64,000 nt of DNA from Mobula hypostoma. Its lineage: Eukaryota. Each line of letters begins with the position of its first letter. The first letter of the stretch is position 1. The stretch lies in the NCBI RefSeq assembly GCF_963921235.1, contig NC_086105.1:57908001-57972000 (forward strand). The letters are read 5' to 3'. Both the position numbers and the translations under genes were made by a program. The notes under the pieces were generated by a model. That model worked only from the letters and a program-made list of their open reading frames with translations. It searched no databases and was not told where the DNA came from. Shown one piece after another: positions 9,305-64,000 of this stretch.

Positions 9305-9600
9305 ATGCTCAGGGAGCTGGATTTGGTTCCAATCTCTGGTGCTGTCTGCCTGGGCTTTGTAGAACCCCACTATCCCTGTGTGGGTTTCCCAACATTTTTG
9401 CTTCCTCCCACATTCCAATGATATTGATGAGTTGATTCATTGGCTGCTATAAACTGCCTGTGGAGTAGGAGGGAGGCAGGAGCGAAGGGCAGGGAGTGTG
9501 GGTGTCGTTGAAAGGAATGCAGCAGTTAAATTGGGGTTGGTGTAGATGGGTACTCAGTATGAACATGGTGTGTTGATATGTCTATGTTCTATGTTCTATG
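9305..9600 (+). mobile_element. Decayed V-SINE/HE1-like SINE
   Basis: V-domain-like GTGTGGGTTTCC..TTCCTCCCACATTCCAA and (TTCTATG)n tail. Confidence 0.6.
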
Positions 9601-12619: not shown

Positions 12620-13156
12620 AGGGCATAGAGAACTACAGTACACAAACAGGCCCTTCGGCCCACCCTGATCTTCTAGCTAAACCTATGTATCTCTGTAACC
12701 CTCTGACCCATATACGGTACCTATCCAAACTTTTCTTAAATGTTACAATTAAGCCCCATCCACCACTTCCACACTCACACCATTCTCTGAGCCCTTTCAG
12801 ACTCCTCTTAAGTATTTCACCTTTTACCCCAAACCAATGACCTCCAGTCTAATCGTAGCCAATCAATTTTTTTTACGGGGGCGAGCTTCCTTGCATTCAC
12901 TCTACCTACACCCCTCATAATTTTGGATACCTCCACAAGATACTCCTCATTCTCCTATGCTCCACTGAATAAAGTCCTATCCTGTTCAGCCGTTCCCGAT
13001 AAATCAGGTCCTCAAGCCCTAGTGACATTCTTGTAAATTTTCTCTGCACTCTTTCAAGCTTATTGATATCTTTCCTGTAGGTAGGCAACCAAACTGCACA
13101 CAATACTCCAAATTCAACCTTAAAATATTTTATAATACTTCAACATAACAACCCAA
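12620..13156 (-). mobile_element. CR1 3' end
   Basis: ORF 12915-13103 has YRKDINKLERVQRKFTRM; CR1 3' UTR GGGCCGAAGGGCCTGT. Confidence 0.85.
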
Positions 13157-14749
13157 TGTCACAAGGAACCAAATTTGCATAGTTGTTAAGTGGGGCAGAA
13201 GACACTAATTGCGAGTAAGCACCTTAACCATTTATTTACAAACATCTAAGCCGCCCTAAGTTCCTTAAAACTATGACCTTAAAATGTTCCTTAAAACATT
13301 TACTAATACTTTTACTCAAAATGCATTTCCTTAAATCTCCCCAAGTTACACAATTACAAAGCCAAACATTCAACAAAATGGTACTTACCTGCAGCAGACT
13401 TTCCCAATGGCTCTCCAGCACAGGTTGTGATCTGAAGAGAACCCCTAGTGAAAAGGACCAAGTCTCTCATGTGTGCTTTTCTTTTCCCTCTGGGGCACCT
13501 GGAACCAGAACCCTGGGTTGAGGCGCAAATGCCAGCCAATGGGAGAGGAGTGTTACATACTTCAAATGACTGGCCTGGCAGAAATGGCTTTTAACTGGCA
13601 ATTATTTTTCACCCCTGAAAGATGCAACATCAAGACGATTCAGCCCTCAGGCTATTATAACCACTGCACTTGTCCCACTAAACAACGTATAAAGCACAAA
13701 ACTACAATGCTCAGCACTGTAAGCCCAATAGTGACAACTCAGTGTACAATAGTAGTCCACCAACTTCCTAGCACCCTAAAAAGCCATCAGGTTCACCCTG
13801 GAGTGTAATGGCTATGGAACTGGTCACACGCTTTCTTAATCTTATCTGCCGTCTCTCGGATGTGATTAACTAGGTGAGTGATGACTTGTCGGGAAGGTAA
13901 GTGCAGCATTCTTGATGCTCAATAACAGCACAGTTTCATTTCAGCCGATACTCAGGTCAGCACATCCTCCATGTGCTCGAGAGCTATGGCTCTCTCATTA
14001 GCCAGTGTCTCCATCATAAAGGTCGTATGTATCAATTTCAGGTACAGTCTAGCCATAGCGTACTGGGGGAAAGGTCAGCATCTAAAACCTTTCTGCCCCT
14101 GTGATAGCCCTCTTACAGCACCAATCAACATGGGCAGGGTGATCATCCAGGGCACTGGGGTGGTTTACGTACAGCACCACATACCCAAGATAGCAGCAGC
14201 TGTACCACTCCATGAGGAGTCATGGGTAGGCCCAGGAACCATGTATTCACTAAGCGCCTTTCAGTGTCCAGGAAGTGCCCGCTAACACAGCAGCATTTGG
14301 TGCAGATAGTCATCGCGGCATACAGTTGCTGCTCACACTTGCTTTGTCCCACCGACTGGTTGGATCCTTTCCCGTCACCTGCCCTGTCGGCTGGGGAATC
14401 ACTTTCCAAGCCAGGGTTAAACAAGGTATATGGAGGGAGAAATCTGCCCTTAAAGCACTTACTCCTCTAGGAGTCAGTAAGGCTGAATCTCAGGGTTGTA
14501 TCTGGTGACATCTATGTACTTTGATAATATATTTACTTTTAACTTTGAGTTCAGGTGGTTCACTGCTTACTGCAGAACACCAGACACCACTGAAGGATTT
14601 GCAAAGAGCCAATTGCTTTATCTGTTGCTTCAGCTACACATTCATGCTTTCAATTCACCCCACCACTTGCAGGTACAATGGGATGTGAAACACTTACAAA
14701 ATGCTGGACTCTGCGACTCAGTCTGGGACCTGAGCTCCCATAAAATGCA

Positions 14750-45815: not shown

Positions 45816-46951
45816 TGGGTGCCGCCCAGTGCACTGGTTTCAATGCTGAATTCAAGTGCTGTCTCTGCATAATATGCATACTCCCCCTGTACCCATGTGC
45901 GGTTCCTCTGTATGTCTCATTTTCTCCCAAATCCTAACAACGCATTAGCTGGTCCTCTAATGCAAGCTCAGGCAAAAGGAAACTTATGGCAGATGATGGA
46001 CGCACAAATTAAACTCAAACTTGTACTACATGAGGGAGAATGAGTGGAAGGGCTACAAGGAAAGGAGAGGAATGAGAATGGGATTACTCCCCAGGACCAT
46101 GGAAAGGACACAAGGAACAAAATGACAACCTTCTTTGATCTATGAGCAACACAAATCTATGCATTTAGAATTGCAGAGATGATATAAAACACCTGACTGG
46201 CCTCTCTAGAACTGGTTCATCAGAAGAGACGGGCAGTGAAGCGGATCGGATGGGCACCCCTCTGCCTGAGTCGGAATCCAGCAGCAGTGCTGTAGTCAGT
46301 TCACCATTTGCATTGGAAAAACCATAATAAACAACTTGCTTCAGTTCCTTTCTTAACAATTCTTCCCTCAGTAAACTATTACTGTCTTCATCAACAATGT
46401 AACATTGTTGGTAAATTGTGAAGTTGGTTTATTATTGTCACATGTACTGAAGTACATTGAAAATCTTTGTTGTGCATGCCATCCACACAGGTAATTTCAT
46501 TACAGCAGTGCTTTGAAGTAGAACATAGGAAACCAATACGAAATGAAGAATAATGTTTTACAATTACAGAGAAAGTGCAGTGTGAACAATAAGCTGGAAG
46601 ATCATAATAAGGCGTATTCTAATATTATCTTAGATTTACTTTGTATGCCCATCGAAATACACAGCACCATTATTTGGGAAATAATTATTTGGGAAATGTA
46701 CTTAACATTTATTGCTTATTTATTATTATTATTTCTTTGTTTTTTTTCTTTTGTATTTACACAGTACAGTTTGTTGTATTTTGTACATTGGCTGTCTTTT
46801 TGTCTTGTTGGGTGTGGTCTTTCATTAATCCTATTACGTTTCTTGGATTTACTGAGCATGCCTGCAATAAAAGGAATCTCAGGGTTGTATGTGATGCATA
46901 TAGGTACTTTGATAAGTTTACTTTGAAATTTGAAATCTTGTCTCGCTGACG

Positions 46952-47699
46952 TGCCTTTGAAAAACAATGCTATAGCTCCCCCTATGGTACAGTTGATGAA
47001 TTCGCCATTAATGAGGAGAGACTGCATTCACTTTTTAGTCTATGTTAAACTAATTATTCCCAGTTGGGATTAGTTGGGACACAAGATCATAACAATGTAA
47101 ATTATGAGGTCAAGAGTTCATCTCATGATATTAGAGGACCATTCACTATCTAATTACAGCAGGATGGAGGCTGTCTCTGAGCCTGGTGGGACATGCATTC
47201 AGACTGTTATAACATCTGCTTGATTTTGGGGGCGGGGGGCACAGGGAGAAGTGAAAACGTACGGGGTGGGTAGGGTGCTTGATTATGTAGGCTGCTCTAC
47301 TGAAGCAGCAATATGTGTAGACAGAGTCTAGGGTAAGCAGACTGGTTTTCACGATCTGCTAAGCTGTGGCCACTACACTGCAGTTTTTTCACATCATGGG
47401 CAGTGCGGTTCCGATATGAAGTTGTTGTTAATATACTCTGACTTCTCTGATCCCAAGGCGGCAGTCTACTCTGGAGTGGAATGTGACCTAAAATTGTGTG
47501 TTCTAATAACCTGCTCGTTACTTTACAATGCATGGCCATCAAACCACACTACACCCATTGTACCTCATGCATGCCTTTGAAGAACAATGCTATAGCTCCC
47601 CCTATGTACAGTTAATAAAGCTGCTGTCACTGACGAGAGACTGCATTAAGGTCTGTCTGTTAATTGAATTGTTCCCAATTAGAATTAGTTATGACACAA
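46952..47699 (+). repeat. Imperfect ~130-bp direct repeat (46952-47084 and 47572-47699)
   Basis: TGCCTTTGAA.AACAATGCTATAGCTCCCCCTATG..GAGAGACTGCATT..GACACAA occurs twice. Confidence 0.85.
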
Positions 47700-48619
47700 A
47701 CACCAGGACAGAATTCTCCAGCTGTTCATTCGATTACCTAACAGCGCTGAAACTGAAGAAATATTCCAGACAAAAGGGCTTTTCTACCTGCCTGCCTCAA
47801 TATACAAGAACATATGTTGACAAGATATAGGAGTAGAATCAGGCCATTGAGCCCATTGAGTCTCACCCAGCATTCAATCTGAGCTGATTATTTTCAACCC
47901 CACCTTCTTGCAGTAAGCCTTAACCCCTTTACCAATCAAGAGCTTCTCAATCTCTGCCTTAAATACAGCCAATGTCTCGGCCTCCACAGCCCTGACAACA
48001 ATTAATTCCACAAATTTTTCATGCTCTAGCTGAAGACATAAATTCCTTGTCACCTTTCATGAAAATGAATGTCCCTTTGTTATTGCAAAACAGCCACAAA
48101 ATATTCTCTATAATCTGTTCCAACTTCAAAATATCACCCCCACCACACTGCCAATAAAAGTCCACAATGAGAGCCTACAAAACATTTTCTTAGCTTGAGA
48201 GCCAGCTCTCAAGGAACACGAAGATCCTTGATGGTAATCCATGTGGAGCAGCACTGTCTCTGGCTGTTTGTGGCACAGAGCAACCAGATACCAAACCAGG
48301 CACAAAGCTCATCATGCCCTGGCCAGATGAGACCCCCATTCTCCCAAACACTTCAGAAACTTGAACTATTCAGAGCAGACAGGCTAAGGTATGGAGAGGC
48401 ACCACCTTCTCCTCAACACCCTTCATATCTGTGGGGAGAATAAGTGAACCAGAGTTTGCACCATCTCCCAGTTCAATGTCACCATCACTCTTGCCACTAA
48501 TTATACTGGAATGGTGCAGAACCATCATTTACATGTCTAGCAGCATAATTGCATTAAGGGCGCAATTCATTACACACTATTGGAATCTGGTTGAATATCT
48601 CTGTAAAAATTGTGACACT

Positions 48620-49300
48620 TTTTGGCAGCAGTATGGTGCCAGATGCAACAAGTTACTGTAAGTTACAATTAAAATAAAATAAATAAAGATTGCAAAAGAA
48701 GAATAGTGAGGTAGTGTTTATGAACTATTGACAAATCTGACAGAGAAGAATAAGCTGTTCCTAAAATGATGTGTGGGTCTTCAGGCTCCTGTACCTCCTC
48801 CCTGATGGTACTAATGAGAAGAGGGCATGCTCTGGGTGGTGAGGCTCTTTAATTACGGATGCAGTCTTTCCGAGACATCGTCTTTTGAAGTTGTCATCGA
48901 TGATGGAGAGGTTTGTGCCATGATGAAGATGTCCGAGCTCACAACAATTGCTGCCTCTTAAATTCCATACAATGGCACCTCTGTACTCAGTGATGCAACC
49001 AGCTATAGTGCTGTCCAGTTCCATCTGCAGAAAGATGCTGGAGTTTTTGGTGATACACCAAATCTCCTCAAACTCCCAATGAATTATAGCCACTGGTGTG
49101 CCTCCTTCACGATTGCATCAAAGAGTTGGGCCCAGAACAACATCTCTGAGATGTTGACATCCATGAACTCGAACTTGCTCAACTTATCCACTGCTGCCAC
49201 CCCTGATCAGGACCGGTGTACGTTCTGCCAATTTCTCCGCTTGAAATCCATGATCATTCTTCAGACATTAAGTGCAAGGTTGTTGCTGTAACACCACTTA
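48620..49300 (-). mobile_element. Rex1-type LINE 3' fragment
   Basis: ORF 48761-49093 ends ASVIKEPHHPEHALFSLVPSGRRYRSLKTHT. Confidence 0.85.
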
Positions 49301-49476
49301 ATCAGTGTAAGTTATTAATCTAAAATCATTCTATCTATATGAACACTTTTTAGATGTTTTGATATTTAACAGCAGCAGAGATCTCTCAGGTGTACTACAT
49401 ACAGCACAGAACAGGAATAAGATCTCGCTGTTCAACCCATTTTGTGCCAGACTAATTAATCTGGTAATTAAAACCT

Positions 49477-51826
49477 TGTAGCCGCACTGATACGCGATGA
49501 GTGAAAACAACACACTGACTCAAGTAGGGTCAGGTTGAACCGTTTACTGTTTGAATTGGCGCGCTTAAGTGCCTGCTCCCAGCAACCCCTGCTCTTTGTG
49601 GGGCGGAAGCGATGTCGGCTTCCGGGCCGAGGTCTGTCCCGCACTCAGAGTCCTCTTGGTTGCCGTCGGCTGCAGACTCACCGGCGACTGCTGGAGCCGG
49701 TTTGCTTGCGGCATGGCGAGCCACCACATGAACCCCCCAGAACCGGCGCTAGGGGGTGCAGGGTCCGCAGCCTGCACACACTCAGTTCTTTTAGCTGGCT
49801 GGCCTTAACGTCATGGGGGTGGTACCGCAACCGGGCGTTCAAGGTCCAGATGCGCCGGTTTGAGACAGTCAATGGTAAAAGTCTCATCCCGACCGCCACT
49901 GACGAGAACACAGGTCACTCCATTATGGCGCACCACCTTGTAGGGTCCCTCGTATGGTCGCTGTAGGGGTGGTCTGTGCACGCCTTGGCGGACGAAAACA
50001 TACTTGCTCTGTTGTAGGTCCCTGGGCACGAAAGAGGGTGTTGTTCCGTGATGGGATGTCGGGACTGGGGCAAGTGTTCCAAGCCGCTCCCGGAGTTTAG
50101 TTAGGACCCCAGCAGGTGTGTCCTCCCGGCCACGGGTTGCTGGCGCAAACTCACCGGGAACCATGAGCGGGGCACCGTAAACCAGTTCGGCTGATGATGC
50201 GGCCGGGTCCTCCTTGGGTGCCGTGCGGATGCCAAACAGCACCCAGGGAAATTTGTCCACCCAGTCTGGCTCTTGGAGGCGTGCCATCAGGGCTGACTTC
50301 AAGTGCCTGTGGAAACGTTCCACCAGGCCGTTAGACTGCGGGTGGTAAGCAGTCGTTCGGTGGAGCTGGGTTCCGAGGAGTTGTGCCAGTGCAGACCACA
50401 AAGCCGATGTGAACTGCACACCCGTCTGAAGTGATGTGGGCTGGGAGTCCGAACTGTGCCACCCAGGTGGTAATCAGGGCACTGGCACATGTCTCCGTGG
50501 CCATGTCAACGAGTGGGACAGCTTCCAGCCACCTCGTGAACCTGTCCACCATGGTGAACAGGTATCTCGCTCCTCTCGAAACTGGCAGTGGGCCGATGAT
50601 GTCCATGTGGACATGTTCAAACCTCCTATGTGTCGGCTGGAAGGGTTGCAGTGGGGCCCTCACGTGTCTCTGGATTTTGGAGGTTTGCCAGTGCGTGCAT
50701 GTCCTGGTCCAGTGACCGACCTCCTTGTGTAGGCTGTGCCACACAAACCTGTCTGCGATCAGCCGGATGGTCGCCCGGATGGAAGGGTGGACTAAACTGT
50801 GCAAGGTGTCAAAAACGCGGTGCCTGCAAGCGGTCGGAAAAATGGGCTGAGGTTGCCTGGTGGACACATCGCAAAGGAGCTTCTTACCTTCGGGCCCAAT
50901 GGTTATGTCTTCGAGGCGGAGTCCTGAGACTGCGGTTCGGTACGCCAGCATCTCTCCATCCAGCCGTTGCGCCTCAGCTAACACCACATATTCCACCCCC
51001 CCGGAGACAGAGAGTACACTGATTGGACTGAGGTTCGTGACAGTGCGTCTGCCACACGTTGTTCTTCCCGGAGATGTGCTTGATCGTGGTGGTAAACTCC
51101 GAGATGTACGACAGATGGCATTGTTGGCGGCCCGACCATGGGTCCGACACTTTGGCAAACGCGAAAGTGAGGGGCTTGTGGTCTGTGAAGACCGTGAACT
51201 CCCTCCCCTCCAGGAAGTACCTGAAGTGCCGGATGGCAAGGTACAGGGCCAGCAGCTCCCTGTCGAAAGCGCTGTACTTAAGATCTGGGGGTCGTATGTG
51301 CCGGCTGAAGAAGGCGAGCGGCTTCCACTGCCTTCGATGAGCTGCTCGAGCACGCCCCCAGCTGCCACGTCGGAAGCATCCACAGTGAGGGCAGTGGGGG
51401 GTGGACTAGGAGTGTGGTGTTTGCTAGCGCGTTCTTGGCTTGTTCGAAAGCTGCCTTTGCCTCCTCTGTCCAGGTGACCTCTTTGACCTTGCCGGACAGC
51501 AATCCAAAAAGGGGCCGCATGATCCGGGCCGCTGAGGGCAGGAACCGGTGGTAAAAGTTAACCATCCCAACAAACTCCTGCAGGCCTTTAACAGTGCTGG
51601 GCCTGGCGAATTGGCGGATGGCCTCGACTTTCGCCGGCAGGGGCACAGCTCCATGGCGGTCGATCAGGTGTCCCAAGAAGTCAATGGCGGGTAGGCCGAA
51701 CTGGCACTTGGCGGGGTTGATAGCCAGGCCGTAGTTGCTCAGGCGGCGGCAGAGCAGGGGTAACTGTGCTAGATGATCCTGGCGGGAGTGGCTGGCGATA
51801 AGGATGGCATCCAGGCAGATGAACAG
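49477..51826 (-). mobile_element. Gypsy LTR retrotransposon, 3' half (RT end, RNase H, integrase, PPT, 3' LTR), frameshifted
   Basis: ORFs 51278-51676 (FVGMVNFYHRF), 50331-51383 (DASD, HMDIIGPLP, VDRFTRW), 49811-50419 (TAYHPQSNGLVER, PYEGPY). LTR 49477-49728; PPT ~49729-49744. YLDD decayed to CLDA at ~51815. Confidence 0.95.
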
Positions 51827-52925
51827 AAAGTCAATGGCTTTGTGTTTTGCATTCTATGTCTTTCACTTTTTTTTGATGTTTGGGTGGTTTGATCAGTTTT
51901 TTGCTCATTGGTGTTTGCTGTTTTTCTTTGAATGTGTTCCATGGTTTGTGTCTCGTGGCAGTCTGTGGGAAGATGAATCTCAGGGATGTATACTACATAC
52001 AAAATGAGATAATAAATCTACTTTGAATCTTTTAATTTATGTCAATTACCTGTAGAGAATAAAGTTGGTAAATACTCTAGAGTGTATCATGCTTTTAAGA
52101 TCTGAACAAGGGAAAACAAGATGCAAACGAACATTAACTTTAGCATAAAATCATCAGCATTTAATTAACATTAGCATAAAATCAAGCATTTGGCCAGTGT
52201 TAAACGATAAATTGAATATTTCGTCAGTATAGTTCATTTGAGAACAAAGCAGCAGAATTAGGTGACCACTTAAGCAAACCGTTGAATTGTCACAATCGAG
52301 GCAGAGAGCAGTACAGCTTTGGTACAGGCCCTTTTGCCAAAAGAGTCCATGCTTACCAGATTGTCCATCACCCCAGTCCCAATAGCCTGTGTTCAGCTCA
52401 TTTCCCTCCAGGCCCTAAATGATGCTATCATCTCTGCTTCTCCCACTTCCTCTGGCAGAACATTCCATTTACTCACCAGTGTCTACCTGAAAATATTGCC
52501 CTTTGAGGGCCTTTCAGAATCATTTCCCTCCCATCCTAAATCGACGCTCCTTTTTGGACTCCCCTATCCTGGGGAAAATATTGTTGCCAACCACCTCATC
52601 TAATCTCTCAGAATTTTAAACACATCTCTAAGTTCATCTCTTAGTCTCCTAAATTCCAAAGAGTGAAGACCTAGCCCAGCCAACCTCCATAACTCCGGGC
52701 CTCTGGAGCAATATACAATGTATTAGTTCATAACAGATCACCCAACTAGATTGAGAACATTTCTTAAACTCTCAAAAGAAAGTAGATTACCCGATATAAT
52801 TGAAGTGAACTAACACCTCACAGAGAAGTGACACCTCTCTGCCCATTTTGAAGGAGAGAGCGAGCCTGCAGTATGTCAAATTGTCCGGTGAAAATATTTT
52901 TTTCAGCTGCTGATCATGATCTTTC

Positions 52926-54947
52926 TTTTTTTTTAATATAATTTTTATTGAGTTTTCAAGTGATACATGAGGGAAAAAAATATCTACCCTCCCCCCTCCC
53001 CTTAACTCTCCCCCCCCGATATATACTCCTACCTAAAAAGAAAAGAAAAAAAAAGAAAAAAAAGGAACGGCCTGAATATTGGAAGGTTTGCACATGCTCC
53101 ATGGGATAAAAATAAATTTTATATATATTTGTTACTTTCCCCCAAGGAACCCAGATCTTCATCATCGGAGCTATAAATAAGGGCTCCAAAATATTCAAAA
53201 ATGTTACATATTTATCTCTTAAATTCTAAAACATTACTTAGCTTCTCAACTCTCATAGTTCCCTGGGGAATCTCTTTGAACTTCACCATGTTGCTATGTG
53301 TTTCCCTCCCAATCATCCAGGCAAAAAGAAAAAAAAAATAGATAGATACAAAAAAAGAAAAAACAAAATACCCCCCTACTAATGTTGTGAATGAAAAGAT
53401 ACACAACACTACCCCCCTCCATTGTGCGGGTCGTGGCTATTGCCACGCTTGCACACATGAATAACGTAGCGATTGGACAGTGTTTCTTCCAGCTCCCCCG
53501 TAACAAAAAATTATATATATATAGAAAAAAAAATTAATGTTATTATTCCCAGCTAATATTCCTCAAATTGTAACCTTTCTTCCCCTCCCTCATATAATTA
53601 ATAATATATTTATATATTCATCTGCCTAAAAATTCAACAGGCCTAATCCTTAATCCAGTCTTCATCTTCAATCCATCTCGCTCCCCTAAGTTTGTTCTTG
53701 TATGTGGTGAATATTCAAGGAACCTCGCACAAACTCCTCTGCTTTCCGGTAATCGTCAAAAAATCTTTTTTCTCCACCAGACAAGAGAATCTTCAAGGTT
53801 GCAGGATAACGCAATATAAATTGATAACCGTGATCCCATAGGGCTTTCTTCACTGGATTGAACTTCTTCCTTCTTTTCAAAAGTTCATAACTTATGTCAG
53901 GGTAGAAAAAAATTTTCTTCCCTTCTATCACCAGTGGCCCTTTTCTCTTCTTGGCAGCTTGGGCAGTCACCTGTAGAATCCTTTCTTTGTCTTGAAATCC
54001 TAAGAATTTGATTAAAATTGATCGTGGATATTGGTCATCTTGTGGTTTTGGGCTCAGAGCTCTATGTATCCGCTCAATTTCAATTGATCGGTCTTCCTCT
54101 TTCATTTGCAAGGTTTTCGGGATCCATCTTTGAAAAAATTCTATTGGATTATCTCCCTCTATACCTTCTTTGAGACCAACAATTTTAATGTTATTACGTC
54201 TAAAATTTTCCAACACGTCCACTTTCTCCAAGAGTCGATTTCTTTCCGTGTTCCAGACAAGCACATTATTTTCTGTTTTTTCCACTCTATCGTTAATATG
54301 CTCCATTGTTCTTTCCATCTTCTGAAGTTTCTTATCCATTTTATCCTGTCTTTTCATAGCTTTATCATAGCACATCTTCACGTCTCTAAGCTCTGTTCTT
54401 AATTTTCTTAATTCAGCCGTTAACTGCAATAAAGCCTCTCTTATGTCTCCATCGTCTCCTTTACTTCCAATCTCTTCCAGTTCTTCCTCCTCTTCTTCAT
54501 CTGTATTCTCTGCGCTATCCAATTCTGACTCTGATTCACTTTCAGTTGCAGTGGCCGTCAGTTCTTGTAGTTTAAATTGTGTCGATTTGCGCATGCGCAA
54601 TTCCGGCATCTTCTTCCGAGAGACCGCTACCACCGTCATTGCTCCCTGTACTTCTACGCCGGAGATAAAATGCGTCTCCCCTGAAGGAGATCCAACCTGA
54701 ATCCGAGGTTCCATCACTGCAGTAGGCTCTTTTATCTTCCCATCTCGCGGCGACTTCACAACAACAGACTTCTTCTGTTGCGGTTTACGAGGCATATCAT
54801 AGAGTAGGCTTACGAAGTTTATAAGTAGTTTTCGGAAAGTATTTATTAACTTTACTTTGTTTAAACGGTACTTTGCTGATTTTTTACGGGAGAGCTAGAT
54901 TTACATGTCTCAATCCTACGTCATCACGTGACGCCCCCCCCCACCCC
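52926..54947 (-). mobile_element. Full-length ORF1-only (half-L1-like) L1 element
   Basis: 14-bp TSD GATCATGATCTTTC at 52912-52925 and 54948-54961; AATAAA and A-tail at 52926-52949; G-rich CpG 5' end. Confidence 0.9.
53686..54795 (-). CDS. L1 ORF1p (coiled coil, RRM, C-terminal domain), intact 369 aa
   Basis: RRNNIKIVGLKEG, IERIHRA, PRSILIKF, YPDIS, RRKKF, YPATLKI; acidic N-terminal tract. Confidence 0.9.
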   Translation of the reverse strand: MPRKPQQKKSVVVKSPRDGKIKEPTAVMEPRIQVGSPSGETHFISGVEVQGAMTVVAVSRKKMPELRMRKSTQFKLQELTATATESESESELDSAENTDEEEEEELEEIGSKGDDGDIREALLQLTAELRKLRTELRDVKMCYDKAMKRQDKMDKKLQKMERTMEHINDRVEKTENNVLVWNTERNRLLEKVDVLENFRRNNIKIVGLKEGIEGDNPIEFFQRWIPKTLQMKEEDRSIEIERIHRALSPKPQDDQYPRSILIKFLGFQDKERILQVTAQAAKKRKGPLVIEGKKIFFYPDISYELLKRRKKFNPVKKALWDHGYQFILRYPATLKILLSGGEKRFFDDYRKAEEFVRGSLNIHHIQEQT

Positions 54948-55224
54948 GATCATGATCTTTCCAGGGGCCTCTGCTATTGCTTGCTTGATGGGTGGAGGGT
55001 GGTGATGATTTTTGCTGAAGTAAATGGGGGAGGGTGATGCTCAATGTATTGCAGCTGCTTGTGCATGTGGGGGACTTCGGGGTATGAACACTTTTACCGT
55101 CACTGATTCTTTGGGGTGCTCTTCTGTTTTCTTGGATGTCCGTGAAGAACAAAAACTTCAGGTTATATATTCCATACGTTCTCTGACATTAAATATAACT
55201 ATTGAACTTGTTTGTTTTTTCGAT

Positions 55225-55537
55225 CTGAGGTTTACTTATTTGTCATGTGCACTATGAAATATCAAAAAATACAGTGTGTGTTATTTGCAACAATGACCAA
55301 CAGAGTCCAAGGATGTGCTGGAGGTTGCCCAGCCAGTGTCACCATACTTCCAATGCCAGAATAACATGCCCACAACTCACTAAACTAAGCTCACATCTTT
55401 GGAATGTTGGAGGAAACATGAGCACCCAAAGGAAACTCATGCCATCGAGGGGAGAATGTACTTACAGTGATGGGAATTGAACCCAGGTTACTGGCACTGT
55501 AAAGCATTATGCTAAATGTTGTGTGACCATACTGCCC
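55225..55537 (-). mobile_element. V-SINE-like element with non-CR1 tail
   Basis: tRNA-like head (GGGTTCAATTCC B box), V-domain-like core, tail ending CACATGACAAATAAGTAAACC. Confidence 0.6.
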
Positions 55538-56921
55538 AATATACCAGGACAAACGTACTGAGCAATAAATACATTCTGGTGTTTGGTCCCTATTGATCAG
55601 GTGGTACTTGAAATACACAGTACAAGACAGTTAGTGTATAGGACAATGCTATTTGTTTTAATTTTGACCTAAATGAAATTGCCAAATTGGTGTGGCAACA
55701 ACGGAGCTGAATTGATGTGATTCTGGGAATTTAACAATTAGCACCTTCAGTTTTAAAGGAAACAAGGTATGCTTCCTGCAACAGTTTGATCAGGAGGAGC
55801 CACGGAATAGAAAGGTTGAAAAAATATTTACCTGTACAAATATGATTTATTGAGGCTTGAACAGTTTATAATATAGTATTAGTAACAATGAAATTAAGGG
55901 AAGAAACAGAATCTTATTTTGTTCACAACTGGTAAAGATTTTAAGACTCCTTTTCACAAAGCACGCTAATCCTGTTGAGGTGGCAAGGAAGATAGATGAA
56001 ATAATCAATAAAGTATGATAATGTTGTCAAACTAGAGAAATCACTGTATATTGTGTGCACAATACCTGTTAATTGTTTGATAGGATATTTCCATCATACT
56101 CACACTCATTATTTCCAACATAAAACATTAAAGAGAGTCAGCTAGAACATCTTATCATTGGGCCTTTTACTCTGCTGTGTGACTCAATGTCTCCCCCCCC
56201 CCCCACTCCCACCCAATGTCTATGATGACCATCAAATACTTATCTATCCTGTTACCACTTACCAGCACTTGGACTGTAGCCTTTGAAGCTTAACCAATTC
56301 ATGTGTTCTTCTTTTGCAAATATTGTGGTATCTCCACTAAGTTCTCAGGCAGCCATCCTCTCAGCGATATTCCTTTTTCCCCTTGGTTCCTTTCTTAGTG
56401 GTCAGCTGAAACCCCTCCAATCCACCTTTAAATTCCTTCCCCTCCCCTTGTTCGACTTGGCTTAGACCCAACCATGAAAAATGACTATGTACCATATCTA
56501 TGCCTTTGATAATTTATATACCTCCCTCAAGCCATCCTTCAACCACTTTTTCATTGGAAAGAAGGATTTGTTGAATCAACTGGAGAAAGTTTGTTCTTCC
56601 ATTTTAAAGCCCTTAATTGATATACAATATATACAGTAATTTGAAGCTTTAATTGTGTCAGACAAAGGAGTACAATTATCCATCAGTTGGCTGTGAAAAG
56701 ATGGTGTTTAAATAGAAACAAATGATTCACAAACAGGATGATAATCAGCCCAGCACATTATCCACTCTGAATCGGGTCGATCAGGGTCGTGAACTGCAGG
56801 AACAGCGTGTGACACGGACCTGGCCCAGTGTCAGTGGAATGGAGAGCGTGTTAAAGGAGAGGGAGGTGCGGGAAAACCAGGCATGTTAGGCAGAACGAGG
56901 CAGTGGATTGCTTGGCCCTCG

Positions 56922-57823
56922 TCAGAACTGGGTGTGTTTTATAATAAGAGTCAGAGGATATTTCACAATATCTTTCAGCTGCTCCCTAAAAAGCGTCTGG
57001 GTCACAGCGTAAAGAGCCGTATTCGTGCAGCAGCTAAGGAGCTGCAGCATGTAGGCCACCTCCTGCATTGAATAAGGTGGAAATTCTGTCCCCTGCATAA
57101 GCTGAATCAATTGGACCCATATATAATTTGCTGTAAACAATGCCCATAATGAAATGAAGTTCCCCGAAATTGCCAGCAATAGGATGAGGGATTTTCTGCG
57201 ACTTTCCATCTCTGTGTCTCTGGGAGTTTCCCCAGTGCCGGGACCTCGGAGTCTCTTGCGGGCTCTGCTGGCCACCAAAATGTGTCTGATGGTCACTGCG
57301 TTGAGCAGCAGTACCAGGAGAAACGGGACCACAGGGGTGAGCAGGTAATGAAGGATAGCAATTGTTCCCCAGACTGGAGAGCCCAGAACACCATTCCTTG
57401 TACCGCAAAATCTGGGGTTATCATCAACAAAATACACACCTGTGAGAATAATATACCAGAAAATATTCTTTGAACAGCTCACAGCAGTCACTGTCCCCAT
57501 GACTACTGCCGCCATTCTCTCAGTGCAATATTTATTCCTCAGTCTCTGGTAACAAATGGCCACACATCGATCAAATGTGAAAGCGACAGTAAACCAGACC
57601 GAGCAGTCTGTGGCTGCGTAAATCATGGCTGCTTGGATGTTACACATGCGGAGCGAAAACAGGAACCTGAAGTACTTCGAATAAACAACCGGAATCTGCC
57701 TCAAAATCAGGTCGAGAAAAACGACCAGAAGATCTGCCGCTGCCATGGCAACCAGGTAGTGAGTGACAACTTTGGAGAGTCCGCACTTCCCCCGGGATAG
57801 AATCGCAATCGTCACAATGTTCA
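56922..57823 (-). CDS. GPR139-like class A orphan GPCR, main coding exon (end of TM1 to stop)
   Basis: NIVTIAILSRGKCGLS, YLVAMAAADLL, SVWFTVAFTFDRCVAIC, LLLNAVTI, RRKSLILL, LLSCCTNTALY; no stops; pyrimidine tract + TAG acceptor at 57824-57825 (phase 1). Exon 1 not located. Confidence 0.9.
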
Positions 57824-58624
57824 CTATGGGGGCGGGGGAATAAACAGGTGGATTATGTATGAGGCCAAAGAATAAGATAACAGATTCATTGAGAACGTTT
57901 AGTAGTGAAACCACCTGGTTTCCTTGGCTGCGTGAGTCTGGGGAAAACACTCTCCGGTCCTGCCTTATACCCTGGTATGTGTGCATGCTGTGTAATTTGC
58001 TACCCGGTTACAAATTGGTTCCAGGAAATAATGGACTGTACACTGCATACGATGAAACGAATTATCGGTTCTCCCCAGCGTCTTCTCAATCCATCTCCCG
58101 CTGAACAAAAAAACCCAAGACTAACCTTATTGTCCCTCACCAAGAAAACCTCCCCCAGATTGGATGGCACATTTTCCACATCAACCTGCAGCTTCAACAG
58201 GCTAAACGCAGAAAAGACTGCTTTCCCAGAGCTGCTAAATGAAATACCTATAGCATAACAGTAAAGATGTGCACCCTGCATTATAATTGTGTAACTGTGG
58301 TTATAAATAGCAACGAGGATATCAACATAAGTTGCCGCTTACAAGCATGCACAAATACCCTCGGCTGATGTCGAAGTAGGAGTGCTTGTTCCAGCTCTTG
58401 AGCATTACCCAAACTCCTTGGAAAAATGTGAGGGACTTAGTCCAGTTTTGTGTTCCTGATTATTTAACAAAAGCAATGGACGCAAGGAGAAAAAATGTCT
58501 GCTTCTTCTTTTGGCCTTTACCCAGAGATCCTGGGTCACTGGGGGAGTGTGGAGAGGCGGCCTGCGCATGATGTGGGAGGTTAAGTCAGAAGAAATATTC
58601 CAGGTATATTCAGGTCTAAGAAAT

Positions 58625-61580
58625 AGACAGGTATATTCCAAAAAAGAAGAAATTTTCGAGTGGAAAAAGGATGCAACCATGGTTGACAAGAGAAGTCAAA
58701 GCCAAAGTTAAAGCTAAGGAGAGGGCATACAAGGAAGCAGAAATGATTGGGAAGACAGAGGATTGGGAAGTCTTTAAAACCTTACAAAAGGAAACCAAGA
58801 AGGTCATTAAGAGAGAAAAGATGAACTATGAAAGGAAACTAGCAAATAATATCAAAGAGGATACTAAAAGCTTTTTCAAGTATATAAAGAGTAAAAGACA
58901 GGTGAGAGTAGATATAGGACCGATAGAAAATGATACTGGAGAAATTGTAATGGGAGATGAGGAGATGGCAGAGGAACTGAACAAGTATTTTGCATCAGTC
59001 TTCACTGAGGAAGACAGCAGGATACCGGACACTCAAGGGTGGCAGGGAAGAGATGTGTGCGCAGTCACAATTACGACAGAGAAAGTACTCAGGAAGCTGA
59101 ATAGGCTAAAGGTCGATAAATCTCCTGGACCAGATGGAATGCACCCTCGTGTTCTGAAGGAAGTAGCTGTGGAGATTGCGGAGGCATTAGTGATGATCTT
59201 TCAAAAGTCGATAGATTCTGGCATGGTTCCGGAAGAATGGAAGATTGCAAATGTCACTCCGCTATTTAAGAAGGGGGCAAGGAAGCAAAAAGGAAATTAT
59301 AGACCTGTTAGCTTGACATCGGTGGTTGGGAAGTCGTTGGAGTCGATTGTCAAGGATGAGGTTACAGAGTACCTGGAGGCATATGACAAGATAGGCAGAA
59401 CTCAGCATGGATTCCTTAAAGGAAAATCCTGCCTGACAAACCTATTACAATTTTTTGAGGAAATTACCAGTAGGCTAGACAAGGGAGATGCAGTGGATGT
59501 TGTATATTTGGATTTTCAGAAGGCCTTTGACAAGGTGCCACACATGAGGCTGCTTAACAAGATAAGAGCCCATGGAATTACAGGAAAGTTACATACGTGG
59601 TGTTACGAGAATACACATAAAATTAAGATGTTTGCTGGCCTGGGCTAGCATCAGTGGCATCAGCAGTTGGTCTGCCACCTGCCCTCAGGGGAAGGAGAGA
59701 TAAGGAACAATGGAGCAGCGTCTGGAGATGTGTAATGAAGGGACGTGGGAGAGAGAGCTGTCTGGAGCGGCTCCCCCTTTGAACCCTGAACTGTTTGAAG
59801 TGGTGGACAGGCGATACCCCAGCAGGGGGATAAAAAGGGACAGGTTTGCTAACACAGACACACACGCCACCCGAGGTAACGAGACCCTGGAAGCGGTGCG
59901 CCTCTCACGAGTGGGTGAGAAGCACCAGACAACGACAAGGGTGGAAAGGTACGATCAGCGGGAACCCGGTGTGTGTCCGCCCTTGCCTGGGTGCCGGGTT
60001 CACTGCAGAGGATCGACCGCATCTGGAGGAGGGGTCACAGTCGGTGACCTCAGGTGACATCACCAAGGACCCGCCCAAATGCTGTTTGTGAGCCATCTCG
60101 CTGGTCTGTGAGCCATCTCGCTGGTCTGTGAGTGAAGCAGTGTTCTGAATGATCAGTTGTTCCTATTCTATCTCTCTCTCCCCCCACGTTGTCCCTCGCC
60201 ATGGCAACGATTACTGCGAACTGAACTGGACTGGACTTTGAGTCATTTTGAAATTTGGTCATTTACCCCCTAGACAACGATAGAGCTTGATTGATGCTGT
60301 TATCTTAATTCTGTGCACATGTGCGTTTATCATCGCTGAACTGTTGCATTTATTATCCTTTCGATTACTGTGTTGCTTGTTTCTTTAATAAAACTTTCTT
60401 AGTTCTAGTACTCCAGACTCCAACTGAGTGATCCATTTCTGCTGGTTTGGCAACCCAGTTACGGGGTACGTAACAGTGGATAGAGCGTTGGCTGATTGGC
60501 AGGAAACAGAGAGTGGGAATAAAGGGATCCTATTCTGGTTGGCTGCCGGTTACCAGTAGTTTTCCGCAGGGATCAGTGTTGGGGCCGCTTCTTTTTACAT
60601 TGTACATTAACGATTTGGATTATGGAATAGATGGCTTTGTGGCTAAGTTTACTGATGATACGAAGATAGGTGGAGGGGCCGGTAGTGCTGAGGAAATGGA
60701 GAGTCTGCAGAGAGACTTGGATAGATTGGAAGAATGGGCAGAGAAGTGGCAAATGAAGTACAATGTTGGAAAGTGTATGGTTATGCACTTTGGCAGAAAA
60801 AATAAACGGGCAGACTATTATTTAAATGGGGAAAGAATTCAAAGTTCTGAGATGCAACGGGACTTGGGAGTCCTCGTACAGGATTCCCTTAGAGTTAACC
60901 TCCAGGTTGAGCCGGTAGTGAAGAAAGCGAATGCAATGTTGGCATTCATTTCTAGAGGAATAGAGTATAGGAGCAGGGATGTGATGTTGAGGCTCTATAA
61001 GGCGCTGGTGAGACCTCACTTGGAGTACTGTGGGCAGTTTTGGTCTCCTTATTTAAGAAAGGATGTGCTGACGTTGGAGAGGGTACAGAGAAGATTCACT
61101 AGAATGATTCCGGGAATGAGAGGGTTAACATATGAGGAACGTTTGTCTGCTCTTGGACTGTATTCCTTGGAGTTTAGAAGAATGAGGGGAGACCTCATAG
61201 AAACATTTCGAATGTTAAAAGGCATGGACAGAGTGGATGTGGCAAAGTTGTTTCCCATGATGGGGGAGTCTAGTACGAGAGGGCATGACTTCAGGATTGA
61301 AGGGTGCCCTTTCAGAACAGAAATGCGAAAAAATTTTTTTAGTCAGAGGGTGGTGAATCTATGGAATTTGTTGCCATGGGCAGCAGTGGAGGCCAAGTCA
61401 TTGGGTGTATTTAAGGCAGAGATTGATAGGTATCTGAATAGCCAGGGCATCAAAGGTTATGGTGAGAAGGTGGGGCAGTGGGACTAAATAGGATAAAATG
61501 GATCAGCTCATGATAAAATGGCGGAGCAGAGTCGATGGGCCGAATGGCCTTCTTCTGCTCCTTTGTCTTATGGTCTTATG
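58625..61580 (+). mobile_element. Young 5'-truncated CR1 LINE interrupted by a solo LTR
   Basis: ORFs 58671-59648 and 60513-61487 (NYRPVSLTS, DFQKAFDKVPH, PQGSVLGP, KFTDDT); (TCTTATGG)n tail. Confidence 0.97.
59601..60475 (+). mobile_element. 875-bp solo LTR
   Basis: TGTTACG..CGTAACA termini; TSD GTGG at 59597-59600 and 60476-60479; AATAAA 60387-60392; 20-bp tandem duplication ~60088-60132. Confidence 0.93.
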
Positions 61581-62489
61581 GAAATCTTTACTGCTGTTTG
61601 TTGTGCACTAAACCAGTGTGTGTGGTGTTGTCGGATCAAGCTGCTGCCATTATACATTGCCAGTGACCTTGGGATACTCCAATGGAATAACCAATCTACA
61701 CTCTAATCATTAGCTAATGACCCAGTGACCATGAGGTGGTTTCAACCCCCGCGGTAAGTGTGGGGGAAATTACTTGGTCCCTGCTACTGATTATTCCTTC
61801 GTGAGCTTGGGTTACGTTGACAGAATCATCCAGGATCCTTCAATTAGTTATTTTGAACTGACCCTGATTGGGGTGGACAATCAATTCAAATTCCTGCTCC
61901 TGATAGTTTCCCAATAACTCTGATTTTGATTGGACAACAGGCCAGGCACCTTGGCCTTTACTCCATTGTCCCTGGATTAATATAAGGAAATCAATCCAGT
62001 TTCTGCTCCAGTCTATTGCCCCTGTGCTAGCGTGGGGATGACAGCTCCATTTCCAGGTCCCAATGGTTACAGAATGAACTTGGCATTGTTGGTGAAAAAG
62101 CTCAATTCTCATCTGTTGATCATTACATTGTGTGGGCGAGTCAGCCATGTTCTACGTCATTGCATGGTGAACCTTGGACTTGGACCCCACCTCCACTGAC
62201 TGTGTTCCTCCTCTTTACCGTTTAAAAGACCAGGTCACCATTTGACCTGTCATCTCCTTAACATTCACTGATTTTGATTGCCATCTTTGACTCCACCTTG
62301 TACACTTTAACAGATTGCTCATTCTTCAATCCTTCTCTCCCATATTCATCCACAGGTTAGTAAATATGAGCTACCTGTTCTTATGCCAGTTAATGAACCT
62401 ATAACAAAGACAGTTCTCCTTTCCCACATTGCTGCAGACAAATCTGCAGATCCAATTCTTTCCAACATTTTCTGCTTTATTTCATAAAA

Positions 62490-63035
62490 TTTAGATTAGG
62501 GCCCATTTGGAGTATTTCATTCAGTTCTGGTCATCCCATAGTAGAAATGGCGTAGAAAGTGCAGAAGAGGCTTACCAGGATGTTGTCTGGACTAACGGCC
62601 AACACAATTCCGAAATGGATGGACAGACTTGGGGTTGTTCTCTCTAAAGTGGTTGAGGCCAAGGGGAGATCTAATAGAAATTTACTTGATTATAAGAGGC
62701 ATTGATAGAGTAGATAATGTGCATCGTTCGCCCAGGCTCAAAATGTCTCATACTCAAGGGCATGCAAATCAAGTGAGGGAGTTAGCTTAAAGGAGATGTG
62801 TGGGCGTTTTTTTTTACAAAGAGTGGTGGGTGCCTGGAATGCGCTGCTAGGAGTGACAGTGGAAACAAATATGATAGAACAGAGGCATTTAAGAGACTAT
62901 TAGAGATTAGAATGTATGAGATTAGATGGATATGGATGTTTTGTAGACAGATTGGATTAATTTGGTTAGACATTTACTTTCCAGTTTAATGAGTTTGGCA
63001 AAATATAGTGGGCCATGGGACCTGTTTCTGTGTTA
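62490..63035 (+). mobile_element. Decayed CR1 3' end
   Basis: PHLEYFIQFWSSH and RGDLIE segments plus CR1 3' UTR. Confidence 0.8.
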
Positions 63036-63281
63036 TTTGTTTCCATTTTCTTTTTTTTTGAATTCCATCTTTCATGCAAAAACAATCCCTTGTCAACAGA
63101 TTCACATATTGGCATTAGAAAGTAAATGCCAGAAATTATTTTTTTCAAGACAGTGAACACTGGTTTGACTGCTGCATCCATTTCAGAGCCAAGGACAGTG
63201 ACAGTCACATCAAACACTCCGAGAAACTGCAGGGGAAAATGAACAAGAGGGACCAGTGATTTTATAAGGGATGAAGAACTT

Positions 63282-64000
63282 TGTTATTCCTCTTGCGACG
63301 GGGTCCTGAATTACCCCTATAAATGGTGCTCGATTACCCCTATGAACTGTGCTTTTGAAAAGAGAGAGAGAGTTATTTAACACAAACACCTTTAAAAGAG
63401 AAAGAGAGAGAGACGAAGACTGCTCAAAGGTTGTTTATACTTTCTCCGAGGACATTGCCTGCTTGTACAGACAGAGAAGGGAGGTGTTATTTGAGAGACA
63501 GTTGGTACTCCCTACGGTGAGATAAATAGTAGGTCAGATGACAGATCTGAGACACATGATTTTGGACACTGAATGAGCTTTGTTGTGCCCACAGAAAAAA
63601 ATGGATTTTGGAGGATTGATCAGTGGCTCTCGCAGTGTGAACAGGGTATGACCAGTGGGGAGTTATTCATGTTGTCAACCCCCGTCTGGGTTGACAGCTC
63701 CACCACAGAAGAACTGTGCCCTTTGTTGTGGTCACAGTCGGTGACTTTTAAAGGATTTCGGAGGACAACGGGAAGATTGACAGTCAGCTCACCTGAAGAC
63801 TCAAATCTCTCCCTCTCGCTCTCTCCATCACTACTCAACTCAATACCATGAACTGAACTGAACTTTACTCATCATCGTAAGTCTGTCTCTATTTACCTCT
63901 AGACTTGAAGAAGCTTGGTTTTCATATAGTTCCACACTTACTGATATACTTACTTACATATAATCATTGCTAATCTGTTTGATTTATCTGCATTTATTTC
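63282..64000 (+). mobile_element. LTR distantly related to 59601-60475; runs off the right edge
   Basis: Starts TGTTA; shares GGTCACAGTCGGTGAC, GAACTGAACTG and ATTTACC..TAGAC in the same order. Confidence 0.65.

What the first reader, a model, noticed from the sequence alone, without database searches (positions are those of the whole stretch)
52912..54961. Complete ORF1-only 'half-L1' element with perfect 14-bp TSD
Seen: a 2022-bp unit bounded by GATCATGATCTTTC, with 5' UTR, uninterrupted 369-aa ORF1p, spacer, AATAAA and A-tail. No endonuclease or RT is present. About 53172-53225 reads NLRDKYVTFLNI(frameshift)WSPYL*, which looks like the last codons of an L1 ORF2. Known: ORF1-only HAL1 elements are described in mammals. 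Inference: either an independently arisen non-autonomous family moved in trans by L1 ORF2p, or a single copy that lost ORF2. A family keeping ORF1 intact would imply a cis requirement for ORF1p.
Basis: partly seen in the sequence, partly recalled or inferred. Interest (0 to 1): 0.75.

Follow-up and report, generated by a model that had tools for sequence, protein, structure and literature searches.

The report
ORF1-only half-L1 in a devil ray
This is a real 2-kb jumping-gene copy in the devil ray Mobula hypostoma that kept the first L1 gene and lost the copying enzyme; it belongs to a small-element family known from mammals (HAL1), so it is a new example of a known kind, and this copy looks like a decaying fossil.

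Summary
On the minus strand, window 52926-54947 is a 2022-bp poly-A retroelement. It is flanked by a perfect 14-bp target-site duplication and carries an open 369-aa L1 ORF1p homologue. It has no endonuclease or reverse transcriptase.

A full-length L1 from the same genome (L001) shows what is missing: about 3.6 kb, from about 22 nt upstream of the ORF2 ATG to about 78 nt before the ORF2 stop.

The window is Mobula hypostoma (100% identical to OY992600.1). A second copy on another chromosome (L002) has the same junction and its own 16-bp duplication. Contigs of a second species' DNA run also bridge the junction. So the deleted form itself retrotransposed: it is a HAL1-like family, not a one-off deletion or an assembly collapse.

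Two unchecked first-reader notes report further 2-kb half-L1s on other DNA of this genome.

Selection on ORF1 is not shown:
- L002 has two stop codons.
- The differences between the two copies look neutral.
- The window copy carries private changes at four residues invariant in seven other batoid ORF1s, plus a codon deletion. Its open frame fits chance (P about 0.4).

Hemitrygon akajei has an ORF1-only L1 with a different junction.

Verdict: new member of a known kind, moderate interest.

The parts
52912..52925 (.). Target-site duplication, copy next to the poly-A tail (GATCATGATCTTTC)
   Evidence: Perfect 14-bp direct repeat with 54948-54961. Contig X1 record 2 spans 52808-52949 with no differences.
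52926..52934 (-). Poly-A tail, 9 A (T run on the + strand)
   Evidence: L001 and L002 end the same way, with short A tails.
52935..53170 (-). L1 3' UTR, with the AATAAA signal at 52944-52949
   Evidence: Aligns to the 3' end of full-length L1 L001 13155-13471 and to L002.
53171..53224 (-). Remnant of the last ~18 codons of ORF2 plus its stop, with a private 1-nt insertion near 53188
   Evidence: Reads NLRDKYVTFLNI / WSPYL*. L001 ORF2 ends NLRDKYVTFFNIWRPYLQKIGWHI*. Most family contigs lack the extra base (table 4).
53224..53226 (-). Deletion junction (spacer joined to ORF2 tail). Placement is ambiguous by 1-3 nt of microhomology. No GT..AG.
   Evidence: BLASTN jumps from L001 9563 to 13155. 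The same junction is in L002. Breakpoints are the same against Hypanus L1s. Bridging contigs: X12 rec 9, X9 rec 25, X5 rec 17.
53226..53685 (-). Complete ORF1-ORF2 spacer (~460 nt). It ends ~22 nt short of where the ORF2 ATG would be. It holds a small upstream ORF (53212-53289) that runs across the junction.
   Evidence: Colinear with L001 9104-9563. The ORF2 start MTNLLNFLSFNVNGLNGP lies just beyond.
53686..54795 (-). ORF1, 369 aa, open: coiled coil + RRM + CTD of L1 ORF1p
   Evidence: It is 76% identical to the ORF1 of full-length L001 (P0001) and 87-89% identical to L002's ORF1 (P0003) over the part P0003 covers. Private changes R248S, R266G, A276V, A277T and one codon lost in ENF(S)RRNNIK.
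54796..54947 (-). 5' UTR (152 nt). The conserved terminal motif CGTCACGTGATGACGT is at 54918-54933, preceded by 14 G-rich extra bases at 54934-54947.
   Evidence: The same 5' terminus is found in L001, L002, L004-L008. Promoter function is inferred.
54948..54961 (.). Target-site duplication, copy next to the 5' end

Best explanation
Window 52926-54947 (minus strand) is one insertion of a HAL1-like ('half-L1') non-autonomous retrotransposon family of Mobula hypostoma. An L1 lost about 3.6 kb, which is almost exactly ORF2. The loss runs from ~22 nt upstream of the ORF2 ATG to ~78 nt before the ORF2 stop. The join has 1-3 nt of microhomology, with no splice signals. The resulting 2-kb unit keeps the L1 5' end and UTR, ORF1, the whole inter-ORF spacer, the last codons of ORF2, the 3' UTR, AATAAA and the A tail.

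Shown: this deleted form was copied to at least two different chromosomal sites, each with its own target-site duplication.

Inferred mechanism: the unit is transcribed from the internal promoter at its conserved 5' end and polyadenylated. Endonuclease/reverse transcriptase is supplied in trans by co-resident full-length L1s. Insertion is by target-primed reverse transcription at loosely L1-type sites (TG/GAAAGA, TC/AAGATG), and is full-length because the RNA is short. ORF1p made from the element may coat its own RNA.

This particular copy is most likely an inactive, neutrally decaying fossil whose ORF1 has stayed open by chance.
For: Homology:
- ORF1 matches L1 ORF1p structures.

Anatomy of the deletion:
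- The element is colinear with full-length L1 L001 7859-9563, then jumps to 13155-13471.
- The missing part of L001 encodes Exo_endo_phos and RVT_1.
- The ORF2 start lies just past the 5' breakpoint.

Same genome:
- Window 46922-64000 is 100% identical to M. hypostoma OY992600.1. L001 and L002 are other chromosomes of that assembly.

Second copy:
- L002 is colinear over the whole element at 93% by BLASTN and 94.8% by alignment.
- It has the same junction.
- Its flanks are unrelated, and it has its own perfect TSD AAGATGTGTTCCAACT.

Other runs:
- Junction-bridging contigs occur in a second species' DNA run and in two small runs of organism A.
- Loose ends at 53225 and 53229 read into the ORF2 start and the ORF2 tail. 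So full-length L1s at least 90% alike co-exist with the element.
- Summed word depth over the element is 9,000-36,000, against about 20 for unique flank contigs. This is rough and is not a copy number.

Decay of this copy:
- ORF1 divergence from L002 (5.0%) equals that of the spacer and UTRs (4.2-7.6%). Synonymous share is 16.5 of 55, against 15-16 expected under neutrality with the observed transition bias.
- Four private replacements fall at residues invariant in seven other batoid ORF1s, and one codon is lost.
- P(ORF stays open after 22 random substitutions) is about 0.4.
Against: - Only two copies with the junction could be read directly. The other two in this genome are unchecked first-reader notes.
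- Copy number rests on summed contig depth, which the tool itself says is not a copy number.
- No intact autonomous partner was found: L001's ORF2 is frameshifted.
- No empty orthologous site was recovered. The joints skipping 2123-2128 nt have only 21-22-nt sides and do not fit the TSD.
- Transcription is not shown. The 'RNA?' runs are guesses and could be low-coverage DNA.
- Trans-mobilisation and the promoter are inferences.
Confidence: 0.85

Rival explanations
1. One-off event: a single full-length L1 insertion that lost ORF2 after integration, or an assembly collapse at this locus.
For: A post-insertion internal deletion would also leave intact TSDs. The window holds only one copy.
Against: L002, on another chromosome, has the identical junction and a different perfect TSD. 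Independent contigs from three other runs bridge the junction. Contig X1 record 2 confirms the flank/TSD/poly-A joint.
Confidence: 0.02
2. Recurrent by-product: each ORF1-only copy is made afresh from full-length L1 RNA, either by the same aberrant processing (non-canonical splicing) or by a reverse-transcriptase template jump at a hotspot. On this reading there is no self-propagating half-L1 lineage.
For: Only two copies were read. Their differences look neutral, and there is no sign of selection specific to a half-L1 lineage. Spliced L1 insertions are known in mammals (own knowledge).
Against: - The deleted segment is not bounded by GT..AG or AT..AC in L001 or in the loose-end sequences.
- The two copies share the breakpoint to the base.
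- The two copies share a 20-nt gap after the ORF2 tail relative to L001.
- They share 7 of 31 letters that differ from the family majority.
- Hemitrygon's ORF1-only element has different breakpoints. This argues against a fixed hotspot.
Confidence: 0.1
3. One reading: the family is maintained with ORF1 under purifying selection because ORF1p is needed in cis, as proposed for guinea-pig HAL1.
For: - Both copies descend from sources with an open ORF1. L002's two stops are private single substitutions.
- dN/dS against the full-length subfamily is 0.38-0.46, and the synonymous share of 57/152 exceeds the neutral ~29%.
- Among listed ORF1 sites where the window and L002 share a minority letter, 4 of 6 are synonymous.
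- The Hemitrygon ORF1-only element also has an open 366-370-aa ORF1.
- Literature: HAL1 coding capacity was kept for ~29-44 Myr in guinea pig (PMC3627910, citing Bao & Jurka 2010).
Against: - The window-L002 comparison is indistinguishable from neutral (P 0.3-0.4).
- ORF1 is no less diverged than the non-coding parts.
- One of the two copies is broken.
- The window copy has hits at invariant residues.
- The deeper dN/dS signal can come from the autonomous L1 lineage before the deletion.
Confidence: 0.3
4. A host gene derived from L1 ORF1 (L1TD1-like domestication), or a processed retrocopy of such a gene.
For: There is an open 369-aa frame. RefSeq calls related ORFs isoforms of host genes.
Against: The unit starts at the L1 5' terminus, ends with the L1 3' UTR and A tail, has TSDs and is multi-copy. 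The RefSeq names come from L1 ORF1s lying in introns of host genes.
Confidence: 0.01

Closest known systems
HAL1 (half-L1) of mammals (Smit 1999; Bao & Jurka 2010, as cited in PMC5753468, PMC3627910, PMC4859970)
   Same: It derives from L1. It encodes ORF1p only. It keeps the L1 ends and a poly-A tail, is flanked by TSDs and is dispersed as the short form. It is presumed to use L1 ORF2p in trans.
   Different: The host is a cartilaginous fish. The texts I could read describe HAL1 only in mammals. It arose from a batoid L1 by an independent deletion that removes ORF2 almost exactly and keeps the whole 460-nt spacer. Long-term maintenance of ORF1 is not shown here.
HeT-A (Drosophila, Jockey clade) and Ag-Sponge (Anopheles, CR1 clade): ORF1-present bipartite non-autonomous LINEs (PMC5786205)
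   Same: These are non-autonomous LINE derivatives that keep the 5' and 3' parts and the first ORF and lack RT.
   Different: They belong to different LINE clades. HeT-A has a telomere function. No special target or function is seen here.
Spliced L1 insertions (SpIREs) and internally deleted L1 copies of mammals (own knowledge)
   Same: Both are L1 copies lacking an internal segment but carrying a poly-A tail and TSDs.
   Different: There are no GT..AG borders here. Here the deleted form is found at more than one locus with the same junction.
Full-length batoid L1 (L001 in M. hypostoma; L004, L007, L008 in Hypanus sabinus; L006 in Hemitrygon akajei)
   Same: The 5' terminus motif, ORF1, spacer and 3' UTR are the same. 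L001 is 84-86% identical to the element over the shared parts.
   Different: These carry EN + RT. The element lacks them.

Membership tests
HAL1-like (ORF1-only non-autonomous L1 derivative) | Derived from the L1 clade: an ORF1p with coiled coil, RRM and CTD | tested here: met
   PDB 2ykp/2yko/2ldy E 1e-10 to 3e-11 over residues 179-357. ORF1 is 76% identical to the ORF1 of a full-length L1 in the same genome. Pfam is sub-threshold only.
HAL1-like (ORF1-only non-autonomous L1 derivative) | No endonuclease or reverse transcriptase, but both L1 ends retained | tested here: met
   There is a 3.6-kb gap against L001. The gap encodes Exo_endo_phos + RVT_1. tblastn finds no EN/RT in the element. The 5' terminus and 3' UTR align.
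HAL1-like (ORF1-only non-autonomous L1 derivative) | The short form itself retrotransposed: several copies, same junction, different TSDs | tested here: met
   The window has a 14-bp TSD and L002 a 16-bp TSD, with the same junction and unrelated flanks. Junction contigs occur in other runs. Only two copies were read in full.
HAL1-like (ORF1-only non-autonomous L1 derivative) | Mobilised in trans by ORF2p of a co-resident autonomous L1 | not testable with these tools
   Indirect only. Full-length relatives at least 90% alike are present (loose ends). Target sites are L1-like. No intact ORF2 was seen.
HAL1-like (ORF1-only non-autonomous L1 derivative) | ORF1 coding capacity maintained in the family (purifying selection) | tested here: inconclusive
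   NG86 dN/dS is 0.59 (window-L002), which is neutral once transition bias is allowed for. L002 has 2 stops. dN/dS is 0.38-0.46 against L001.
Spliced L1 insertion (SpIRE-type) | Deleted segment bounded by canonical splice donor and acceptor | tested here: not met
   The deleted segment starts TTGGAG... and ends ...CTTATA in L001 and in the loose-end contigs.
Domesticated ORF1 gene (L1TD1-like) | Single-copy host locus without transposon ends | tested here: not met
   TSDs, an A tail, L1 termini and multiple copies are present.

The most novel reading that the evidence does not exclude
Batoid rays repeatedly spawn ORF1-only L1 derivatives. At least two independent deletions are seen: Mobula and Hemitrygon. 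These may persist as their own lineages with ORF1 under selection. That would extend the HAL1 argument for a cis requirement for ORF1p from mammals to cartilaginous fishes, that is, across jawed vertebrates.
Probability: 0.3. Interest if true: 0.55.

Novelty: new member of a known kind. Interest (0 to 1): 0.4.

Why it matters
In the texts I could reach, half-L1 elements are described only for mammals. There they are used as natural evidence that L1 RNA needs its own ORF1p in cis, while ORF2p can act in trans.

A family of the same design in a devil ray, plus an independently deleted ORF1-only copy in a stingray, suggests this design arises repeatedly wherever L1 is active. It also gives a second, very distant vertebrate lineage in which the cis-ORF1p idea can be tested by counting and dating copies.

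For genome annotation there is a practical point. RefSeq models in four ray genomes label these ORF1s as isoforms of host genes (TADA1, ADAT1, STXBP6, FAM122B). Those labels are artefacts.

Tried and rejected
- Exact-protein look-ups of the window's ORF1p and of the neighbouring receptor ORF found nothing. The genome was identified through the receptor's annotated homologue instead.
- A second word search with the N-terminal 180 aa found only P0003 again.
- The search of earlier findings by sequence was blank, which means nothing.
- Read laying had only Logan contigs. This gave no true copy number, no strand, no transcript ends and no clean empty site. The joints skipping 2123-2128 nt have 21-22-nt sides and do not match the TSD, so I do not count them.
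- The 'RNA?' runs may be low-coverage DNA, so I claim no expression.
- Bao & Jurka 2010 (PMC2923044) is not held. I cite it only through papers that cite it.
- One literature search with 'half-line' was swamped by mathematics papers.
- Searches for elasmobranch or Mobula L1/HAL1 literature found nothing relevant.
- I built no family consensus and no repaired frame. L002's stops were read as X.
- I did not run the big representative search or structure prediction, because homology was already clear.
Full report
**1. What is there**

The feature lies on the minus strand. GATCATGATCTTTC occurs at 52912-52925 and again at 54948-54961, enclosing 2022 bp. In element orientation the unit reads as follows:
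- 14 G-rich bases (54947-54934).
- The motif CGTCACGTGATGACGT, and the rest of a 152-nt 5' UTR.
- An open 369-aa ORF (54795-53686).
- A 460-nt A/T-rich spacer.
- 18 codons plus a stop of an ORF2 remnant (53224-53171).
- A ~235-nt 3' UTR with AATAAA (52949-52944), and a 9-A tail.

The ORF matches the solved human and mouse L1 ORF1p structures over its RRM and C-terminal domain (2ykp E 2.7e-11). Pfam gives only a sub-threshold Tnp_22_dsRBD hit. The window holds no second copy. It has no L1 EN/RT near the element.

**2. Which genome**

Word search of ORF1p returned only batoid ray proteins. The best were two from Mobula hypostoma (P0001 76%, P0003 89%). The locus of the neighbouring receptor's annotated homologue (P0014) is 100% identical to window 46922-64000 over 17,079 nt. 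So the window is M. hypostoma assembly GCA_963921235.1, record OY992600.1. L001 (OY992603.1) and L002 (OY992594.1) are other chromosomes of the same genome.

**3. What was lost**

L001 is a full-length L1 with its own TSD (aacagtgaattag).
- The element aligns to L001 7859-9563 at 84%, then jumps to 13155-13471.
- The skipped 3.6 kb carries Exo_endo_phos and RVT_1. L001's ORF2 is itself broken into three frames.
- The ORF2 start (MTNLLNFLSFNVNGLNGPVKRKR) begins ~22 nt beyond the 5' breakpoint.
- L001's ORF2 ends NLRDKYVTFFNIWRPYLQKIGWHI*.
- The extra base that shifts the frame there is private to this copy (table 4).
- The deleted segment is not bounded by GT..AG. The join has 1-3 nt of microhomology.
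- The same breakpoints appear when the element is compared with full-length L1s of Hypanus sabinus.

**4. Family or one-off**

L002 aligns colinearly with the whole element, at 93% by BLASTN and 94.8% over 1997 aligned columns. That includes the junction. Alignment stops exactly at the element's ends. L002 has its own perfect 16-bp TSD, AAGATGTGTTCCAACT. The deletion therefore predates both insertions, and the short form was retrotransposed at least twice.

Laying Logan contigs of four runs gave the following:
- Junction-bridging contigs in a DNA run of a second species (X5 record 17).
- Junction-bridging contigs in two small runs of organism A (X9 record 25, X12 record 9).
- A contig confirming the flank/TSD/poly-A joint without any difference (X1 record 2).
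- Loose ends at 53225 and 53229 that continue into the ORF2 start and the ORF2 tail. So full-length relatives at least 90% alike co-exist with the element.
- Summed word depth of 9,000-36,000 over the element, against about 20 for unique flank contigs. The tool warns that this is not a copy number, so I take it only as 'high-copy'.

Two first-reader notes on other pieces of this genome describe 1997- and 2037-nt half-L1s (s1-142714, s1-144790). I could not check them.

**5. Is ORF1 kept by selection?**

This is not shown.
- L002's ORF1 has two in-frame stops and two in-frame insertions.
- Nei-Gojobori dN/dS is 0.59 between the window and L002. But 80% of the differences are transitions, and simulation with that bias expects 15-16 synonymous of 55, against 16.5 observed (P 0.3-0.4).
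- ORF1 is as diverged (5.0%) as the spacer (4.2%) and the UTRs (5.6-7.6%).
- Against the full-length subfamily, dN/dS is 0.38-0.46 with a modest synonymous excess. That signal can date from before the deletion.
- In one search's table, at 24 of the 31 element sites I extracted, L002 carries the family-majority letter and the window alone differs.
- Of the 22 such sites in ORF1, 9 are synonymous and 13 are not.
- The replacements include R248S, R266G, A276V and A277T, at positions invariant in seven other batoid ORF1s. One codon is also lost from the conserved ENFSRRNNIK motif.
- An ORF of this length stays open through 22 random substitutions with P about 0.4.

This copy is best read as a decaying fossil from a source that had an open ORF1.

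**6. Wider context**

Eight batoid ORF1-bearing loci were inspected.
- Five are full-length L1s: L001, L004, L006, L007, L008.
- Three are ORF1-only: the window, L002 and L005.

L005 is from Hemitrygon akajei. It is ~1.68 kb with an open 366-370-aa ORF1 and the TSD AATTGTGAGTGCCTGG. Its junction is different: the spacer is joined directly to the last ~100 nt of the 3' UTR. As a single copy, it could also be a post-insertion deletion.

**7. Comparison with what is known**

HAL1 is described as a non-autonomous L1 derivative that encodes only ORF1p and arose several times in mammals (PMC5753468). Its coding capacity was kept for ~29-44 Myr in guinea pig, which was taken to imply cis-ORF1p and trans-ORF2p (PMC3627910). 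HeT-A and Ag-Sponge are the analogous ORF1-present derivatives of Jockey and CR1 (PMC5786205). I found no report of such elements in cartilaginous fishes. The primary HAL1 paper could not be read, so absence from the literature is not established.

**8. Verdict**

- The family reading is supported.
- The cis-requirement inference is open.
- This is a new member of a known kind, of moderate interest.

Noticed in passing
L005:12693-14367 (Hemitrygon akajei CM108229.1): A ~1.68-kb ORF1-only L1 with an open 366-370-aa ORF1 and the TSD AATTGTGAGTGCCTGG. Its deletion junction differs from the Mobula one: the spacer is joined to the last ~100 nt of the 3' UTR. It is either an independent half-L1 or a one-off deletion.
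   Followed up: partly
window 53212-53289 (-); L001 ~9490-9590: A small upstream ORF sits in the ORF1-ORF2 spacer (MVKFKEIPQGTM.VEK..NVLDWSNFVKNND* in L001). Its stop lies 4 nt past the ORF2 ATG in another frame. The arrangement would suit termination-reinitiation for ORF2. It is conserved between L001 and the half-L1 copies up to the junction.
   Followed up: no
window 54918-54933 (-); L001 7863-7878; L002 7863-7878; L005 12696-12711: All batoid L1s inspected, from three genera, begin with CGTCAC(G/A)TGATGACGT, an E-box plus a CRE-like half-site. This follows a variable run of extra G's (4-5 in most, 14 G-rich bases in the window copy). It is probably the core of the internal promoter.
   Followed up: no
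P0001, P0005, P0006, P0011: RefSeq names L1 ORF1 products lying in introns as isoforms of host genes: transcriptional adapter 1, tRNA-specific adenosine deaminase 1, syntaxin-binding protein 6 and FAM122B. These are annotation artefacts.
   Followed up: partly
L001 vs L007/L008: ORF2 pieces are 80-88% identical in protein between Mobula and Hypanus L1s, while ORF1 is only 41-54% identical. ORF1 evolves far faster than ORF2 in these L1s.
   Followed up: no
window 52843/52848 -> 54972: Contigs of both DNA runs (X1, X5) show joints skipping 2123-2128 nt around the element. The sides are only 21-22 nt. The coordinates do not fit a clean empty site (52925 -> 54962). Unexplained, perhaps a repeat-driven chance join.
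   Followed up: no
window 58671-59648 (+): A 325-aa ORF has distant reverse-transcriptase similarity (23.6% to the L001 RT piece, E 3e-12). It is another, unrelated retroelement remnant.
   Followed up: no
window 56922-57986 (-): A GPR139-like receptor ORF lies 2 kb upstream of the element on the same strand. Its best hit is the M. hypostoma RefSeq model P0014 (94% over 90%), whose 16-kb gene model ends at this exon. More than 1800 homologues (E <= 1e-30) were found, most of those listed from sharks and rays, so this is a large expanded family.
   Followed up: partly
window 50001-52000: A GC-rich stretch (57% against ~42% elsewhere) has overlapping long ORFs on both strands (50331-51383 -, 50860-51477 +).
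   Followed up: no
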